DNA of 62,641 nucleotides, the filler included, from Hausera hauseri (lineage: Eukaryota), in assembly GCA_046269625.1 (NCBI GenBank). It is 11 parts of 11 records of this genome, joined end to end, with 100 filler letters (N's around TTAATTAATTAA, not from the genome) between each part and the next. Parts side by side here need not be neighbours in the genome. Positions count along the whole stretch, not along the records: positions 41,792 to 48,100 come from JBJURY010114654.1; positions 48,201 to 52,534 come from JBJURY010631441.1; 9 more parts are not named here. One strand, given 5' to 3'. Both the position numbers and the translations under genes were made by a program. The stretch's first letter is position 1. Every line of letters begins with the position of its first letter. Positions 41,792 to 48,602 of the stretch are shown here, in pieces. The notes beneath the pieces were generated by a model. The model made no database searches and was not told where the DNA came from. It saw nothing but the letters and a program-made list of their open reading frames with translations.

Positions 41792-42126
41792 ACTGTCTCG
41801 TCTTTTCGTTGCCTCCTTCTTATAAATTCTTCAATTCTCCCCTTTCCAGAGGGATCTATTAAAAACTTCTGAGGCAGCTTTTCTTTAAGTTCTTTCAAGT
41901 CCTTTTTATCTTCTTCAGGCAGTTGGAAATAAACCATGAGAGCCGTCCCTTTTAAATGAAGGGGTAATCTTTCTACTCTCTGTTTGTCATCCCAGTCAAA
42001 ACTTTTGGAATATACCTCATATTCCATCATGAAATCTTGAATGTCTTCTTTACCGGAAAATTTTTTCATGGGTAAGGTGAAATCAGCCTTAGACAGAATC
42101 ACCTGTTCTACTTTGTTACTTGACAT
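41792..42126 (-). CDS. gag: Ty3/Gypsy gag N-terminus, cut by the contig end
   Basis: KFSGKEDIQDFM...WDDKQRVERLPLHLKGTA...RRQRKDET, downstream of a PBS. Confidence 0.88.
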
Positions 42127-42253
42127 GGCTTCTTCTTCACTTAGATTATCTAGATACTCTAATCCAAAATGTTCTTCTTCTGAATGGTAGACGGTTCCTC
42201 TCCTAGTGGTTATTTTGCTTCCTTTAATCTAAAGTCCTAATAAATTTTTTTTC

Positions 42254-42273
42254 GATCCCGGGTCACGGCACCA
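42254..42273 (-). promoter_or_regulatory. Primer-binding site complementary to the tRNA-His 3' end; the 5' LTR ends at 42277
   Basis: TGGTGCCGTGACCCGGGATC matches the 3' end of metazoan tRNA-His (…GTCACGGCACCA) and follows AACA plus a 3-nt spacer. Confidence 0.85.
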
Positions 42274-43429
42274 GTTTGTTCAATCCTCACCAATTTTACT
42301 TGGTAAATGACAATAATTTATTACTTAATTAGTGAAGAGAACAATTAACCTTATCTCAAATCGTTGAGTAGAGGTGGTCGTACGTAATGCTACCTAACTG
42401 TCAGTCAGTAATGTGTATTGTAAGTCTCGGTTTATTTAATTTTACTCACTAAGGTTTAATATCCTATGTCTTTAATTGGGTGATTAAACGGGCGGTCGTT
42501 AGGTAGTGTTAGACCTAGACGACCAAATACCAAGTTAGTTAGGATTTATTTATTTACTTTATTTACTGAAACAAAAGAGCAACGCCAATGAATATTATGA
42601 TAATATTTTATACAACAAAATTCAATAAATCAACCATGAAAACTTTTTAACATACACTCAAAACCACTAAAATAATATACTTACATGATAACATGGTTTC
42701 TTTAAGGCAAGAAATAATCAGCAAAAATTTCTGTTTCTATGTCAAATACAAGTTACTTATATAGCAGTAGGTGAAAAAGTATAAATGTCTATATTAAGAC
42801 AATATGTCCTTTTTAGGACAAAACAACACAACTTTAGGACAAAACAACACAACTAATCATTTCACATAACGAAAAAAAAAAAACAGAAAATCTTTTTCCT
42901 TAACTAGATATTGGTCGCATGCATAAAATCAGCGAGGGAGCAATTGAATAGCGTTTCAGTCAGCGAGGGAGAAATTAAATAATAGTTATTTCAGTCATCA
43001 TCAGTATGTCATTGTGACAGATCATTCAGCTTGATAAACGGAATGATGTCAACATAAGTAATATATTAAGAATTTGTTTCTTTTTATTTTAAAATCATTA
43101 AAGGTTATGATGCATATCTGCTTCATGGTGATCGAAAGGGTTAAAATAATTTGAGATCAGTGTTCATTCATCACATGATAAACAGACAGATGTGCACATC
43201 AAATTCTGAAAACAGATCAACCGCAAGAGTATCGAATAAACGGTAATTCAAAAAAAGATAAAGAATACACGAATCTTAGTCGAGTAAAAAAGCAGCAAAT
43301 ATCACAATGTTCTTTGTCATTTTATAAAAATAGGGCAGACGATAACAACTAAATATACAATCAAAAAACAAATGAGAACTATTATATTACATGAAAATAT
43401 AAACAACCAATGAAATAGTTATTAATCAG

Positions 43430-46400
43430 TTAATTCATTTGATAATCCGATTCCAAAGGCTCTCCTTCCAATTTCGTAAAATTCAAGAAATGTGTCGGAC
43501 GATGCAATTTATGATAATAAGTCAGTGGTAAACCAAGTTTCACATCGTATTTGGAATTTGTGCTCAATCGAACTCCATGGAAGTTGTAGTTCCATGAAGA
43601 CACATTCGGAATAATAAAGAATCCTTGGAATTTATCTGACAGCAACATTTGAACTTTTTCAAAATGACTTGGTTGATATCCCTTAGTACTACTTGATTTA
43701 TCTCGAACCGATCTTCCCCATTCGAAACCACCAGGCGTCAGTTTATAAGCACATAGTGTAACCGATCCCGGAGTGAAAGAACACGTCATTACAATCGTTC
43801 TCTGTCCATCTTTTTCAGCAAATACTTTCGCATGAGTAGAAATGTCCTGAGGTGACAACTGCGGAGATTCATTCGACTGAGTGTGTATCCAACCAAGAGG
43901 TTCCATTTCGTCCAAAATGTCGTGTTGCGGTAAATCGTTCGGGAAATCAACGTCGTGTGGAGTGCCTGCCTGCGGCGGCAGTACAATGCACCGAATTTCT
44001 TTAATTTGAGGCTTATCGGGTGGACTGACGCCGTACAAAAAGCCAGCAACTTGAGTTCTCAAATCACCAATAACAATAAATTTCTTCAGAATGTTCTGTG
44101 GTAAAATGAAAGTATATGCACCATCTTTGGATTCTTCATTGCTAATGTAAATATTATTCGTTCTCAAATTTAAACCAGTTGCTGAGATGGCTCTCACACG
44201 CCACTCCGTCTTGCTGGTGAAATGTTGCGTTTCATAATTGCTTGTAGTCGTTGTTATAATTTCATCTCCATGTTTGTTCGTCGTTCTGGTGGTAACTGCA
44301 GTTAACTGAGATTGTTCTTTATTCTGCTTCTCAATTTCTGCAATTTGCTGTCGCTGTTGAGATGGTGTGGAAATCTCCATTCCCAGAATAATGTCTCGAA
44401 TTTCAGACTGAGTCAATGACGCTACGTTAACATTATTTCGTTTGCCATAATCCATTAAAATCAGATCCTTCAACTGGTTTTCGACATTTGTCCATTGCTG
44501 GGGTGTTAATGTAGGCCAAATATGATGCTGTTCGGTGATAACAGTATTGTCAGGTTTCAGTATAACTTTGGCTCTGTCATTGTTCACATGTAATGCTCTC
44601 AGAATTAATATCAATCTAGAGAAAGCCGTGTATGAACTAACTGATTCTAACCAATCGTCATACAAATTATACAATAACATTTTCGGTTCTGTTGCTCGAA
44701 GAATTTCATCTCCAAACTTCTCTACCTTAAGACATGCTTGGAATGGAAGCTGCAACTCGCTACCCTTGATGATAATATTTGGAAAATCAAGCAAGTGCAC
44801 TTCGAGAGGATCTAACATTCCCTTTCTTGTAACGATAATCTGTTTCGGTTGTTCTTCAACAGGCACCGATCGAATAAGTGCTGCTACTTCTTCTGCTGTT
44901 TTCCACTTGGCTAACTGACCAAGACGTTTCTGGCCTGACCATACTGAGGTGTGAATAATTTTCAAATACAATTGTCCAGTTCGTGGATTGAATATGAAAA
45001 TTGCTCCGTTGATAGGTTTTGTAGTCAGATTGCCTTCGAATGTTTTATGAATGGTAACACGGTACACATTAGTATCGTCAACAAACCATATAATTTGATT
45101 TGAGAACAATTCATTGTAATTCTGAGAACTTAAGTAAGGTTCCGTCGGTTCACTGGAGTATAACTGTAATGCCTTACGAATACGCTCCCTCAAAACATAC
45201 AATGCGGGATTTGATTTCATTATTTTCGTCATTGCCTGTTGCATCAATTTCTTCAAACCAGGCACCCAGTTTCCGTATGCAGAATGGATGTTGTATGCCA
45301 AATCAATTGCCACCATAACTCCTGTCGGTGATGGATAAATGGACATAGCATCATTAACGTAATCGTTAAATTTCGACCTGGCATATCGTTCAACGTCGTG
45401 AGAATCATAATCACCCCATCGCAACTGCACGTCAATCCAGAACTTTGGTGTAGTAGTACCGTCTGTCATGTCATTCGAATCAGCCAATAAACTAGGCTTC
45501 GAAACGTTCCATTTATACGAAGCAAACAGTAAAATATCTGCGCAACTTGAATTCATTTTGTATGATTTCCGAGGATGAATAGTTTCTTTCTGAACAGCGT
45601 CAATTTCCAAAGAATCCAAATGTTGGTCCAAAACTTGACAGAGATCCATTACAACGGCTTCGTGGACCTTTTGCCACAGATGAGCTCGGAATATTTGAAT
45701 AAGTGAAATCTTCAACGTCGGAATTTTTCCATGCATAAATATTCCGGTTAAATCCAATTGAACTTGAAATCCAACGTACACATTGGCTCTGTTAATAGTT
45801 GGTGACCACCATAATGTAAATCTACGATTCGGAATTTGGTTCAGACCACTACGCTGGGCATTAGTCAATTTTTTATACTTCATAGATTCTTCAAAACCGC
45901 TAGCTTTTTCCCAAAACAAACCTTCCCAAGTAGGGAAGTACGTTCCTCTAAACAAAGTATGTTCGAGTATTCCCTCAACTCCTCCAAGAGCTTGAATCAT
46001 ATCCGTTCTGTAATTATTCAAATTCCACAATTTACCATCGTGACGCTGATTTGTCCACCAAAATGGATTTTGTTTTAACACTTGATACGTTTTAAAATGC
46101 GTCCTTACTCGCCAACCTCTATCGTACTGAAGCGTATGTCTATCTTTCTGGAAAAGTGTATTTATTCTTGGAATACCTTTATCCCAGCTGTCTTCCAAAT
46201 CTTCGAGCGTTAATCTACGATGTTGGGCGGTGCTTTCTTCACGTTTCTGAGCAAATTCCGCCCAAACTTTCAATGATTCTTTAAATTCTTGTTGCCATGA
46301 AGTAATATAAGGATAGAGATTTGGTATAGCTTGATCCGTATCATGGGACATTCCAGATCGATAATGAGTAATAATAGCGTCAGTCTGTCTAGACCATCGT

Positions 46401-46960
46401 AAGTCAGATTGTGGAATTAAAACGTGACCCATAGACACCATTCCCAGACCACCTAATTCTTTAGGCGTATAGAAAACAACTGGAGGAAATCTAGCAGGCA
46501 TTTTTGAATTCAGACCGATCTTTATACGCGTTTGTATTTTATTCTCGCACTTGACAAGAAGATCCAACAGTTCCGGTGTGCCTAAAACTGCTTCTCTAAA
46601 ATACGTCATCAAACCAATAAGAGCAGTATTCCATTTGTTAACGATTTTTGTAAATGTTGTCGAACCTGATGCCATGAGAATTTGACGCACCCGATTATGG
46701 AATTTTTGCATATGTTCTTCATCGACACGCAAGTAACACATTGCTGTTGTACCTTTAGTATCTTCGTTTTGTAATTCCCATTTTGCACTGGACGACTGAC
46801 TATCTTCTGATATATTTTGAATAGACGTTGGCACAATTCTACAGTCAAATCCACACATGCTGAACAGCAAATTTGGATTGTCCTTACTAAACACTGACAC
46901 GAAACTGTTTTCCCAAAGAATTGTTGTTAGAGCTCTGGGTATACGATTCTTAATATCCAA
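43430..46960 (-). CDS. PRPF8: Pre-mRNA splicing factor 8, C-terminal half only (thumb/X, linker, endonuclease-like, RNase H-like, Jab1/MPN); intronless and uninterrupted; first ATG at 46858
   Basis: [102 protein letters not shown]; ends at a normal C-terminal position. Confidence 0.97.
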
Positions 46961-47500
46961 AAAACGGCTCGTTCCAAATTCACATCATGTTTCGTCAAAC
47001 GCATCCGGCAATCACGAGGGTAAAACTTTTTATTGTTACATCCAACAATTTTTTCATTATTTGGATATGGATTCTCATTTAAACGACGCTGAATCAATTC
47101 CCAAGCCTCTTCAGTTGTGAATCTGGAAAGCATCCAAATTCTGTCGACATATCGATAATAAAGTTGTATTGGATGCACGATCTGTATTTGAACACCTTCG
47201 AACTGACAAAGCGAATTAGATTCATGAGACGGACCAACCATATCAGTCGTACGTGGTAAATCGAGAACCAGAAGATCGAGAATAAGACCGTAGTATTGAA
47301 TAATAAATGACGAAAATAGGAGACCTCTGATTGTACCAAAGATATTTGAAGGCATCATGCCTTTGTATGAAATAGGAACGTTATATTTTGGAATTCATGT
47401 AGTCAGCGATATTGTAATACATAATCAAATTCAACAAACGATTTAAAAATGTCAAATCGATCTTTTCATACATTTTCTCCAATCTACTTTCCAGTTAAAC
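46961..47500 (-). pseudogene. PRPF8: Decayed upstream PRP8 stub (RT palm region)
   Basis: [23 protein letters not shown]...IRGLLFSSFIIQYYGLILDLL...[17 protein letters not shown] has one stop, two frameshifts and substitutions at conserved residues. Homology ends at a 10-bp tandem duplication at 47501-47520. Confidence 0.9.
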
Positions 47501-48602
47501 ATTTGAGAATATTTGAGAATTAGATAAAATCCGTATAGTGTTGTAAATATATGCAAGGCATTTAACGATGCATTTAAACTAAGTGAATTATAATATTAAG
47601 TATTTCTGATATGCAATGACAAATGTAGGGCAATTTCGTCATTAAAAATCTTGCATCAAAAAATTTCAAATTCGCACTATCTCTTCATTTCTTAGGTAGT
47701 GGGATGATACTGGTTTTATAATATCAATTCTTCGTTGGAATTTTTCTATGAAAGTCCCACCTGAGATGCTATTTGATCGTCTCATTTCCATTTTTAACCT
47801 ATTTTTGACTTCTCTGATTTTCTTCGACATTTCTAATTTTCTTTAACTTTTGACTGCTAATTTTAATTCCAAAAAACGGTTTTGGTAACTAAAAAACTTT
47901 TATTGTTGTGACAATTTATAATCGATATTTTTCCTTTTAATCAACATGTAATATAATAAAAAAGGAGAATAAAATTCAACAGAAATATTTGAAAAACTAA
48001 GAATCTGATATCAATCTGATATCAACTGCGTCCAACCAACAAATCCGATTTGTGGCTAAAACTTAAACAGGTCTGGGACGGTCTTCAGCCTGAAATATTA
48101 NNNNNNNNNNNNNNNNNNNNNNNNNNNNNNNNNNNNNNNNNNNNTTAATTAATTAANNNNNNNNNNNNNNNNNNNNNNNNNNNNNNNNNNNNNNNNNNNN
48201 TAAATTTTTCTTCATTCTTTTTTGTCTCACAAATCTGTTCAATTGTCTAGCCAATATCATTAACATATTTAAATGTCGAATTTCGATAAGGCAAAGAGAT
48301 TTACTTTAAGTTTTGTTTATAACTAGCAAAATGCTTGCTTATCAATTAAGTCTTTACGCCAATGCACGAGAATAGTGTCATTTAACCACGTCATCCCTTA
48401 TCCTTTAGTAACGCAGTGAACTTCCTTATTTTTAATTTTTGTGTCATTTGTGACATCATGATGCTTAAGTACCATTTATCCTTTTAAAATATCCAATATA
48501 TTTTGTATTGATCTGCTTGTTTTCAATAAGAATTAATTTAGTTAATATCGTTTTTCAAAAACTCATGTAACTTAACAGTATTTTCAAGGCCGACGGGTTA
48601 TT

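What the first reader, a model, noticed from the sequence alone, without database searches (positions are those of the whole stretch)
43430..47520. Half a PRP8: pristine intronless C-terminal 1176 codons behind a pseudogenised stub, possibly a split or truncated spliceosome core gene
Seen: 3.5 kb with no disablement and strong conservation. The adjoining 540 bp of PRP8 homology has a stop, two frameshifts and radical substitutions, then ends, and roughly the N-terminal 40 percent of the protein is absent from the contig. The first in-frame ATG (46858) falls near the RT palm-thumb/X boundary by my approximate alignment. Established: PRP8 is normally one essential ~2300-2400-aa polypeptide. Inference: gene fission after duplication (N-half encoded elsewhere), trans-splicing, or a selected truncated paralogue.
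Basis: partly seen in the sequence, partly recalled or inferred. Interest (0 to 1): 0.75.

Follow-up and report, generated by a model that had tools for sequence, protein, structure and literature searches.

The report
Flatworm PRP8 exon beside decayed copy
This contig holds the well-kept second half of the core splicing protein PRP8 of a flatworm-like animal, joined to a decayed copy of the stretch that should precede it; most likely a working gene stitched to a dead duplicate, less likely a truly split PRP8.

Summary
On the minus strand, 43433-46960 is an open 1176-codon frame matching human PRP8 1156-2329. The 550 bases upstream (46957-47506) are PRP8 homology with a TAA, a +1 and a -1 frameshift. 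Nothing of the N-terminal ~940 residues lies in the piece.

New here: the closest protein, P0152 (90% identical, unnamed Logan contig), is an uninterrupted 1376-residue frame starting about ten codons upstream of where the window's homology ends. At sites invariant in 8 bilaterian PRP8s, the window's stub has 26 private changes against 2 in P0152 (141 sites); the ORF has 17 against 18 (975 sites). So the ORF is under purifying selection and the stub is not, and the switch falls at the -1 frameshift. Constraint reaches upstream of the first ATG, so ATG 46858 is probably not the start. A tree places the pair inside flatworms.

Contigs of one public run show several other PRP8-like copies of 46337-47518, but only this copy of two 3' stretches (43185-44563, 45943-46336).

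Best reading (0.55): a working PRP8 3' exon joined, in a short contig, to a decayed duplicate of its own 5' end. Rival (0.25): the locus is real and the half-gene is expressed alone, for instance by spliced-leader trans-splicing.

The parts
43433..46960 (-). Open frame of 1176 codons (stop at 43430-43432): PRP8 from the end of the RT-like palm through thumb/X, linker, endonuclease-like, RNase H-like and Jab1/MPN parts. Under purifying selection.
46957..47391 (-). Stub segment B: PRP8 homology (RRM_4 and what follows) in a frame shifted by one relative to the ORF; many radical private changes.
47390..47506 (-). Stub segment A: first 39 codons of the PRP8 homology, back in the ORF's frame, with an internal TAA.
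46955..46959 (-). Site of the -1 frameshift (TGG|AT). This is where decay stops and constraint starts. In run X1, 3 contigs (depth 19.8 of 56.6) carry one more base here, which restores the frame as TGG AAT ATT.
47386..47389 (-). Site of the +1 frameshift: a run of four where three would keep the frame.
47495..47497 (-). In-frame TAA where P0152 and other flatworms have Leu.
46949..46950 (-). Candidate 3' splice or trans-splice acceptor AG after GCCGTTTTTTGGATATTA. The exon would start at 46948 in phase 0. This is inference only.
   Evidence: of 5 AGs within 46900-47010 it is the only one in phase 0
46856..46858 (-). First in-frame ATG (codon 35). Unlikely to be the start, because the codons before it are constrained.
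47501..47520 (.). 10-base unit repeated twice, exactly at the upstream end of the PRP8 homology.

Best explanation
The 3.5-kb frame is the working C-terminal coding exon of the PRP8 gene of a flatworm-like animal. It is the counterpart of the single 1376-codon frame P0152 from a relative, and purifying selection keeps it. The 550-base stub is a decayed duplicate of the first ~185 codons of that exon, and belongs with several other PRP8-like fragment copies in the same genome. In this short contig, which is bounded by repeats, the two lie end to end. I think this is because the assembly path passed from the gene into a duplicate somewhere within the stretch they share, just downstream of the duplicate's last lesion at 46957. 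On this reading the real gene continues upstream into an intact version of the stub, and PRP8 is not halved. Shown: the selection contrast, the existence of other copies, and the flatworm placement. Inferred: the mis-join.
For: (a) Two regimes with a sharp border. Private changes at invariant sites are 26 of 141 in the stub against 17 of 975 in the ORF; P0152 has 2 and 18 (Fisher p=3e-14). A neutral ORF of this length stays stop-free with P=0.026 at 2% divergence, and in 0 of 3000 trials at 5%. (b) The catalytic-core stretch (alignment positions 481-600) is 88-97% identical to quail and 100% to P0152, as expected of a working canonical PRP8. (c) In run X1, exact contigs with 0 differences cover 42951-44783, 44837-45133 and 45790-46474 at depth about 6-8, and no second contig at 85% or more lies on 43185-44563 or 45943-46336. 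So this appears to be the genome's only copy of those stretches. (d) The stretch 46337-47518 has summed depth 34-141 with up to 16 contigs at one site. At stub codons 44, 89, 93 and 140 the other copies carry the canonical residues G, F, A and G, and 3 contigs restore the frame at 46955. A less decayed version of the stub therefore exists in that genome. (e) The upstream flank 47519-47912 has about twice the ORF's depth (13-14.5 against 6-8), which fits two copies of flank plus stub. (f) The piece is a 6.3-kb contig ending in high-copy repeats on both sides (depths 7738 and 401), typical of a fragmented assembly. (g) A split of PRP8 inside its RT-like domain is not known from any organism (recalled; the searches found none).
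Against: No read or contig I could see shows an intact stub physically joined to this ORF. One X1 contig (405 bases, 46887-47291, no gaps, 8 mismatches, depth 6.68) crosses the junction with the frameshift, so a frameshifted junction with window-like sequence on its ORF side does exist in reads. About two thirds of the depth at 46955 lacks the frame-restoring base. The frame-restoring contigs would encode Asn where all 13 aligned PRP8s have Asp. The border of constraint coincides with a phase-0 AG acceptor, which a real re-headed gene predicts and a mis-join does not; by chance the odds are about 0.3, since AAG is 22 of 75 Lys codons. I do not know how the assembly was made.
Confidence: 0.55

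Rival explanations
1. The locus is real, and the C-terminal ~1172 codons are expressed without the stub. A spliced leader is trans-spliced to the AG at 46950/46949. Its terminal AUG then supplies the start codon in frame ([10 protein letters not shown]...). The product holds thumb/X, linker, endonuclease-like, RNase H-like and Jab1/MPN parts. It would work either with a separately encoded N-terminal part (gene fission after duplication) or as a truncated paralogue beside a full PRP8.
For: Constraint starts exactly at the frameshift and covers the 33 codons before the first ATG (0 private changes at 25 invariant sites, P=0.006), so translation must enter upstream of any internal ATG. The only phase-0 AG near the border lies 7 bases downstream of the frameshift, after a T-rich run. 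The tree places the sequence in Platyhelminthes (SH-aLRT 95 and 98). All reported flatworm spliced leaders end in ATG, which can give a start codon, and internal acceptor sites occur (PMC12582326, passages). An X1 contig crosses the frameshifted junction. Only one copy of two 3' stretches (43185-44563, 45943-46336) is seen at 85% or more. P0152 and the window share a long stem (0.27) and changes at 11% of sites invariant in other bilaterians, which could mark a paralogue lineage. P0152 also starts with Met about ten codons upstream of where the window's homology ends.
Against: No RNA run holds the stretch, so there is no evidence of expression, of a leader, or of a separate N-terminal gene. 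The perfect conservation of the catalytic-cavity stretch fits a canonical full protein better than a free half. A viable split inside the RT-like domain has no precedent: I recall that the yeast split-Prp8 study found viable cuts only elsewhere, and I saw that paper only as a reference-list entry. The AG is simply the Lys codon AAG of the conserved DIK motif. Several other copies share the frameshift.
Confidence: 0.25
2. The locus is real and PRP8 is still full length. Functional upstream exons, including a good copy of the stub's 185 codons, lie beyond the piece and are cis-spliced to the AG at 46950/46949. The decayed stub sits inside that intron.
For: The same border and acceptor evidence as above. 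Copies with canonical stub residues exist in the genome.
Against: It needs a donor site right after a second, intact copy of the stub. The sequence upstream of the stub shows no such copy within 590 bases, and the arrangement does not fit simple tandem duplication: there is no GT after the AG, and the upstream flank does not resemble the exon's end.
Confidence: 0.07
3. The whole 4.1 kb is one dead, 5'-truncated retrocopy or duplicate, and the long open frame has survived by chance or youth.
For: It is intronless and sits between an LTR retrotransposon and a Tc1-like fragment. There is an A-rich patch about 340 bases after the stop. Other PRP8 fragments occur in the genome.
Against: One age cannot give both a stub with 18% of invariant sites changed plus 3 lesions and an ORF with 1.7% and none. 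There is no second near-identical parent copy of the 3' stretches 43185-44563 and 45943-46336 in X1. No poly(A) tail and no target-site duplication were found.
Confidence: 0.04

Closest known systems
Canonical PRP8/PRPF8 (human 2335 aa, yeast 2413 aa)
   Same: The same C-terminal architecture in the same order (Pfam). One colinear alignment to human 1156-2329. 78-79% identity to bilaterian PRP8s over the whole homology, and 88-100% in the catalytic-core stretch.
   Different: The piece lacks the N-terminal ~940 residues, and the preceding 185 codons are broken. Together with P0152 it carries changes at 11% of sites invariant in 8 other bilaterians, against 4-7% in a rotifer, a tardigrade, a nematode and Macrostomum. 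The last residues (…ESDYQMN) differ from the …DDPLK and …NPLA ends of P0152 and parasitic flatworms.
P0152, an unnamed 1376-residue frame on a 4490-base Logan contig
   Same: 90% identical to the ORF and its sister in the tree (support 100). It shares 14 of 16 lineage-specific peptide motifs that I tested against 477 fetched proteins; no other protein shares more than 1. It is also uninterrupted, and it starts about ten codons upstream of where the window's homology ends.
   Different: Its first 190 residues are intact and conserved (2 private changes at 141 invariant sites, against 26 in the window). I have no DNA or genomic context for it.
Processed pseudogenes and partial gene duplicates
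   Same: An intronless gene fragment among transposons, with frameshifts and a stop in one part. Other graded-depth fragment copies occur in the same genome.
   Different: 86% of the homology is under selection as strong as in the intact relative. No poly(A) tail or target-site duplication was found.
Flatworm spliced-leader trans-splicing with the leader's 3' AUG as initiator (Cheng et al. 2006, seen only as cited in PMC12582326)
   Same: It would explain a constrained frame that has no ATG of its own, behind a phase-0 AG.
   Different: Nothing here shows a leader, an RNA, or that this animal trans-splices.
Experimentally split yeast Prp8 (Boon et al. 2006; reference entry seen, content recalled)
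   Same: It shows that Prp8 can work as two polypeptides at some cut sites.
   Different: As I recall, the viable cuts lay outside the central RT-like region. A natural split at the palm/thumb border would be new.

Membership tests
PRP8 (complete spliceosomal Prp8/PRPF8 gene) | C-terminal domain set: U5-snRNA binding site 2, U6-snRNA interacting domain, domain IV (RNase H-like), JAB/MPN, PROCT | tested here: met
   all five above Pfam cut-offs (E 1e-9 to 6e-127); colinear with human 1156-2329
PRP8 (complete spliceosomal Prp8/PRPF8 gene) | N-terminal domains (PRO8NT, PROCN) and an intact RRM_4 in the same gene | tested here: not met
   no match to residues 1-947 anywhere in the piece; only a partial RRM_4 (profile 37-90 of 92), in a shifted frame. 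They may lie off the contig.
PRP8 (complete spliceosomal Prp8/PRPF8 gene) | One unbroken reading frame across the RT-like region | tested here: not met
   three HSPs in frames -1, -2, -1, plus a TAA
PRP8 (complete spliceosomal Prp8/PRPF8 gene) | Purifying selection like that of an intact orthologue | tested here: met
   True for 43433-46956 only: 17 against 18 private changes at 975 invariant sites; tree tips 0.077 against 0.082
Processed (LINE-made) retrocopy | Lacks the parent gene's introns | tested here: inconclusive
   No intron in 4.1 kb. But the nearest relative P0152 is uninterrupted over the same span, so the parent gene itself may have one giant last exon. No parent gene structure is available.
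Processed (LINE-made) retrocopy | Poly(A) tail after the 3' UTR, and target-site duplications | tested here: not met
   no A run after the stop on the minus strand, only an A-rich patch near 43071-43100; none of the 20 direct-repeat families shown (31 found) brackets the homology
Spliced-leader trans-spliced flatworm mRNA | AG acceptor after a pyrimidine-rich run, in phase with the frame so that the leader's AUG can start it | tested here: met
   AG at 46950/46949, exon start 46948, phase 0. Weak evidence, because it is the ordinary Lys codon AAG (22 of 75 Lys codons).
Spliced-leader trans-spliced flatworm mRNA | RNA reads carrying the leader joined at the acceptor | not testable with these tools
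   neither of the 2 runs listed is on record as RNA
Contig that mixes paralogous copies | Other copies of the junction stretch in the same genome, similar enough to share assembly words | tested here: met
   summed depth 34-141 on 46337-47518 against 6-8 on the unique parts; up to 16 contigs at one site; one copy 98% identical over 405 bases
Contig that mixes paralogous copies | A molecule that joins an intact stub to this ORF, and none that joins the decayed stub to it | not testable with these tools

The most novel reading that the evidence does not exclude
In this flatworm the core spliceosome protein PRP8 is encoded in two pieces. The C-terminal ~1172 residues, from the thumb/X border onward, are made from this locus alone: a spliced leader trans-spliced at 46948 donates the AUG. 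The N-terminal part, with the RT fingers and palm, comes from another gene. The stub is the decaying overlap left by duplication and complementary loss.
Probability: 0.12. Interest if true: 0.9.

Novelty: new member of a known kind. Interest (0 to 1): 0.42.

Why it matters
PRP8 is a single giant polypeptide in every eukaryote studied, and it forms the cavity that holds the spliceosome's catalytic RNA. A natural split at the palm/thumb border would show that the RT-like core can assemble from two chains. It would also give a direct handle on how Prp8 folds around U5 and U6 RNA. If, as I think more likely, the junction is a mix of a gene and its dead duplicate, the value is practical. This short contig should not be annotated as a truncated or pseudogenised PRP8, and the genome holds a family of PRP8 fragment copies that will confuse gene calling. 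In either case the pair (window, P0152) is an unusually fast-evolving flatworm PRP8 whose C-terminal 1370 codons are uninterrupted (no intron within them).

Tried and rejected
Sequencing or assembly indels as the whole story: both frameshifts sit in short runs, but an X1 contig shares the 46957 one without a gap. Errors also cannot make 26 radical substitutions and a TAA. Rejected.

Translation from ATG 46858: rejected, because the 33 codons before it are constrained.

Programmed frameshift at GTTTTTTGG: the codon phasing does not give a slippery heptamer and the upstream frame is decayed. Rejected by eye.

Recent gene conversion from a second full copy: disfavoured. One exact contig runs from the 3' flank into the ORF at unchanged depth, and no second copy of 43185-44563 is seen.

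Tandem-duplication intron gain: there is no GT after the AG and no exon-like sequence upstream of the stub.

Searches that led nowhere:
- Rfam on the piece found 0 matches.
- Pfam on the gag-like ORF found 0 families.
- The third protein search, with the first 208 ORF residues, found no close paralogue; the best was 79% at full cover.
- The 50%-representative search gave no closer relative than P0152's class.
- Two lineage-specific motif scans of metagenome contigs found 0.
- Paper searches for PRP8 pseudogenes or paralogues, split Prp8, and PRP8 in planarians gave nothing relevant.
- Weak extra homology 47503-47569 with Lingula adds only about 4 bits, so I do not count it.
- Supplementary files were not consulted.

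Limits of the reads evidence: only contigs were laid. Depths are sums over contigs at 85% likeness or more. A filter may drop contigs. Table 3 showed 40 of 325 differences and table 4 showed 12 of 29, so a frame-restoring GAT variant may be among those not shown.
Full report
WHAT IS THERE.
The piece (41792-48100, 36% G+C, no N) carries PRP8 homology on the minus strand only. tblastn with two full-length PRP8s and with P0152 gives just three significant matches:
- 47503-47387, frame -1, 67-77% identity.
- 47388-46936, frame -2, 57-66% identity.
- 46978-43445, frame -1, 80-90% identity.

The last match is the 1176-codon open frame 43433-46960. Pfam finds U5_2-snRNA_bdg, U6-snRNA_bdg, PRP8_domainIV, JAB and PROCT in it. 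It aligns in one stretch to human PRP8 1156-2329 and yeast Prp8 1229-2405.

The stub has three lesions:
- A TAA at 47497-47495, where relatives have Leu.
- One base too many in the run at 47386-47389.
- One base too few between 46957 and 46956.

The two shifts cancel, so segment A and the ORF share a frame. Nothing of the first ~940 residues is in the piece. Only the naming of the palm/thumb border rests on recalled domain limits.

THE CLOSEST RELATIVE.
Of 1029 proteins with E<=1e-50 (120 listed), one stands out. P0152 is 1376 residues, from a 4490-base unnamed Logan contig, and is 90% identical over the full ORF. The next best are 81-82%.

P0152 is itself only 80-81% identical to the best named PRP8s, which are all parasitic flatworms. 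Its frame starts [32 protein letters not shown]. The window's homology starts at the second NV ([17 protein letters not shown]), so the two have the same upstream limit to within ten codons.

Whether MFCFQ is a pyrimidine-rich intron end read through, a true start, or diverged coding sequence I cannot tell without its DNA.

A maximum-likelihood tree of 37 rows (quick search, LG+G4, C-terminal parts only) shows the following:
- The window and P0152 are sisters (support 100).
- The pair is sister to trematodes plus cestodes (95), inside a flatworm clade with Macrostomum (98).
- The stem is long (0.27) and the two tips are equal (0.077 and 0.082).

So the animal is probably a rhabditophoran flatworm. 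Its PRP8 lineage is fast: 10.8% of sites invariant in 8 other bilaterians are changed, against 3.9-7.2% in a rotifer, a tardigrade, a nematode and Macrostomum.

TWO SELECTIVE REGIMES.
I aligned the window's reading (X at each break) with P0152 and 12 named PRP8s, and took the 1116 columns invariant in 8 bilaterians.

| Region | Invariant sites | Private changes, window | Private changes, P0152 |
|---|---|---|---|
| Stub | 141 | 26 | 2 |
| ORF | 975 | 17 | 18 |

Further points:
- Stub against ORF gives Fisher p=3e-14.
- All 26 stub changes lie at alignment positions 1-180. Many are radical (G>D, R>W, W>Y, D>Y, G>E).
- The next private change is a conservative E>D at position 224. The border is therefore the -1 frameshift, at position 186.
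- A neutral copy of the ORF keeps no stop with P=0.18 at 1% divergence and 0.026 at 2%. It did so in 0 of 3000 trials at 5%.
- From 18% changed invariant residues I roughly estimate 9% neutral divergence for the stub. That figure is my own arithmetic.

The two parts therefore have different histories or different constraints. The ORF is not a drifting pseudogene.

Between the frameshift and the first ATG (46858) there are 25 invariant sites with no private change (P=0.006 at the stub's rate). The constrained coding sequence therefore runs right up to the junction, where no ATG exists. An in-frame stop lies ten codons upstream.

WHAT THE READS ADD (contigs only).
Two runs were found. X1 holds 0.79 of the sampled words and X2 holds 0.07. 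Neither is on record as RNA.

- Unique parts. X1 has exact contigs on 42951-43713, 43706-44783, 44837-45133 and 45790-46474, with 0 differences in 2823 bases. Depth is about 6-8 (15.3 on the short 44837-45133 contig). Nothing else at 85% or more lies on 43185-44563 and 45943-46336. At that threshold the genome seems to hold only this copy of those two stretches. The tool warns that a hole proves nothing.
- Multi-copy stretch. Summed depth is 16-36 on 44564-45942, 69-141 on 46337-46927, 34-43 on 46928-47518 and 13-14.5 on the upstream flank. Up to 16 contigs cover one site.
- Other copies are less decayed in the stub. Of the 31 listed differences in the PRP8 region, those in the stub turn the window's odd residues back to the canonical ones (D44G, S89F, T93A, E140G). 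Of the 18 listed in 46499-46926, 11 are synonymous.
- The junction. Three contigs (19.8 of 56.6 depth) have one more base at 46955, restoring the frame as TGG AAT ATT. The rest do not. One 405-base contig (46887-47291, depth 6.68, 8 mismatches, no gap) crosses the frameshifted junction.
- A dead copy. Another copy has radical changes at 44803-44826 and a net 37-base loss at 45032-45072, and is present in both X1 and X2.

The genome thus holds a family of PRP8 fragment copies that overlaps exactly the stub and the first ~480 bases of the ORF.

WEIGHING.
Three readings fit the sharp border.

(1) The contig passes from the working gene into a decayed duplicate inside the stretch they share.
- This needs no new biology.
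- It fits the multi-copy stretch, the doubled depth of the flank, the existence of less decayed stub copies, the repeat-bounded 6.3-kb contig, and the canonical conservation of the catalytic-cavity stretch.
- It carries no positional penalty, since some lesion has to be the last one before the switch.

(2) The locus is real and the ORF is expressed without the stub.
- The only phase-0 AG near the border (46950/46949, after a T-rich run) would let a flatworm spliced leader donate an in-frame start. Such leaders end in AUG, and that AUG can serve as initiator (PMC12582326, passages; it cites Cheng et al. 2006, which I did not see).
- This explains why constraint begins where it does.
- But the AG is just the Lys codon AAG of the conserved DIK motif (AAG is 22 of 75 Lys codons).
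- It also implies either a natural split of PRP8 inside its RT-like domain or a truncated paralogue that keeps a perfect catalytic cavity. Neither is known: searches found nothing, and the yeast split study is recalled only.

(3) A full gene is cis-spliced over the stub. This needs an unseen donor and an unseen second copy of the stub.

A wholly dead retrocopy is excluded by the statistics above.

I put reading (1) at 0.55, (2) at 0.25 (of which a true fission is about 0.12), (3) at 0.07 and the dead copy at 0.04. The remainder is left open.

SURROUNDINGS.
Downstream of the ORF, in the minus sense, lie about 340 unique bases and then repeats.
- At 42255-42277 is a 23-base complement of a tRNA 3' end including CCA, in the position of a primer-binding site (depth up to 42,000 in X1).
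- After it comes a gag-like open frame, 42225-41792, that runs off the piece. Pfam finds nothing in it. The Atlas gives retrotransposon-gag leads at 0.87-0.92.
- At the other edge (48024-48100, plus strand) the frame reads like the C-terminal end of a Tc1/mariner transposase. This is by eye only.

The PRP8 stretch therefore sits between mobile elements.

VERDICT.
The ORF is a selected, very probably working PRP8 exon of a flatworm. 'Half a PRP8' is more likely a product of paralogous copies in a fragmented assembly than a split gene. The split-gene reading is not excluded, though, and it is cheap to test with one long-read or RNA experiment.

Noticed in passing
window 41792-42300 (minus strand): A gag-like open frame (42225 down to the piece's edge), preceded at 42255-42277 by a 23-base complement of a tRNA 3' end with CCA. 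This looks like the 5' region of an LTR retrotransposon. X1 depth is in the thousands, and up to about 42,000 on the 40-base core.
   Followed up: partly
window 48024-48100 (plus strand): The reading frame resembles the C-terminal end of a Tc1/mariner transposase. X1 depth is 401, and the loose-end consensus upstream continues in the same style. Judged by eye only.
   Followed up: no
window 44564-45942 and 46337-47518: Other PRP8-like copies in the same genome, with summed depth rising towards 46337-46730. One decayed copy, with a net 37-base loss at 45032-45072 and six radical changes at 44803-44826, is shared by two differently labelled organisms (X1, X2).
   Followed up: partly
window 47501-47520: A 10-base unit (ATTTGAGAAT) repeated twice, exactly where the PRP8 homology ends. 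Relative to P0152, ten codons between two NV motifs seem to be missing, which may mean a deletion between short direct repeats.
   Followed up: partly
window 43433-43460 (end of the ORF): The last residues (…ESDYQMN) have lost the …D-PL- ending kept by P0152 and parasitic flatworms. In human and yeast this C-terminal tail regulates Brr2 (reference title seen; the rest recalled).
   Followed up: no
window 42812-42853 and 42929-42981: A perfect 21-base tandem duplication, and a pair of 22-base direct repeats (TCAGCGAGGGAG…) 31 bases apart, in the moderately repeated zone between the LTR-like part and the ORF's 3' flank.
   Followed up: no
P0152 and window ORF: Both carry changes at about 11% of sites that are invariant in 8 other bilaterian PRP8s, more than Macrostomum, a nematode, a tardigrade or a rotifer. 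This is an unusually fast PRP8 lineage with C-terminal 1370 codons that are uninterrupted (no intron within them).
   Followed up: partly
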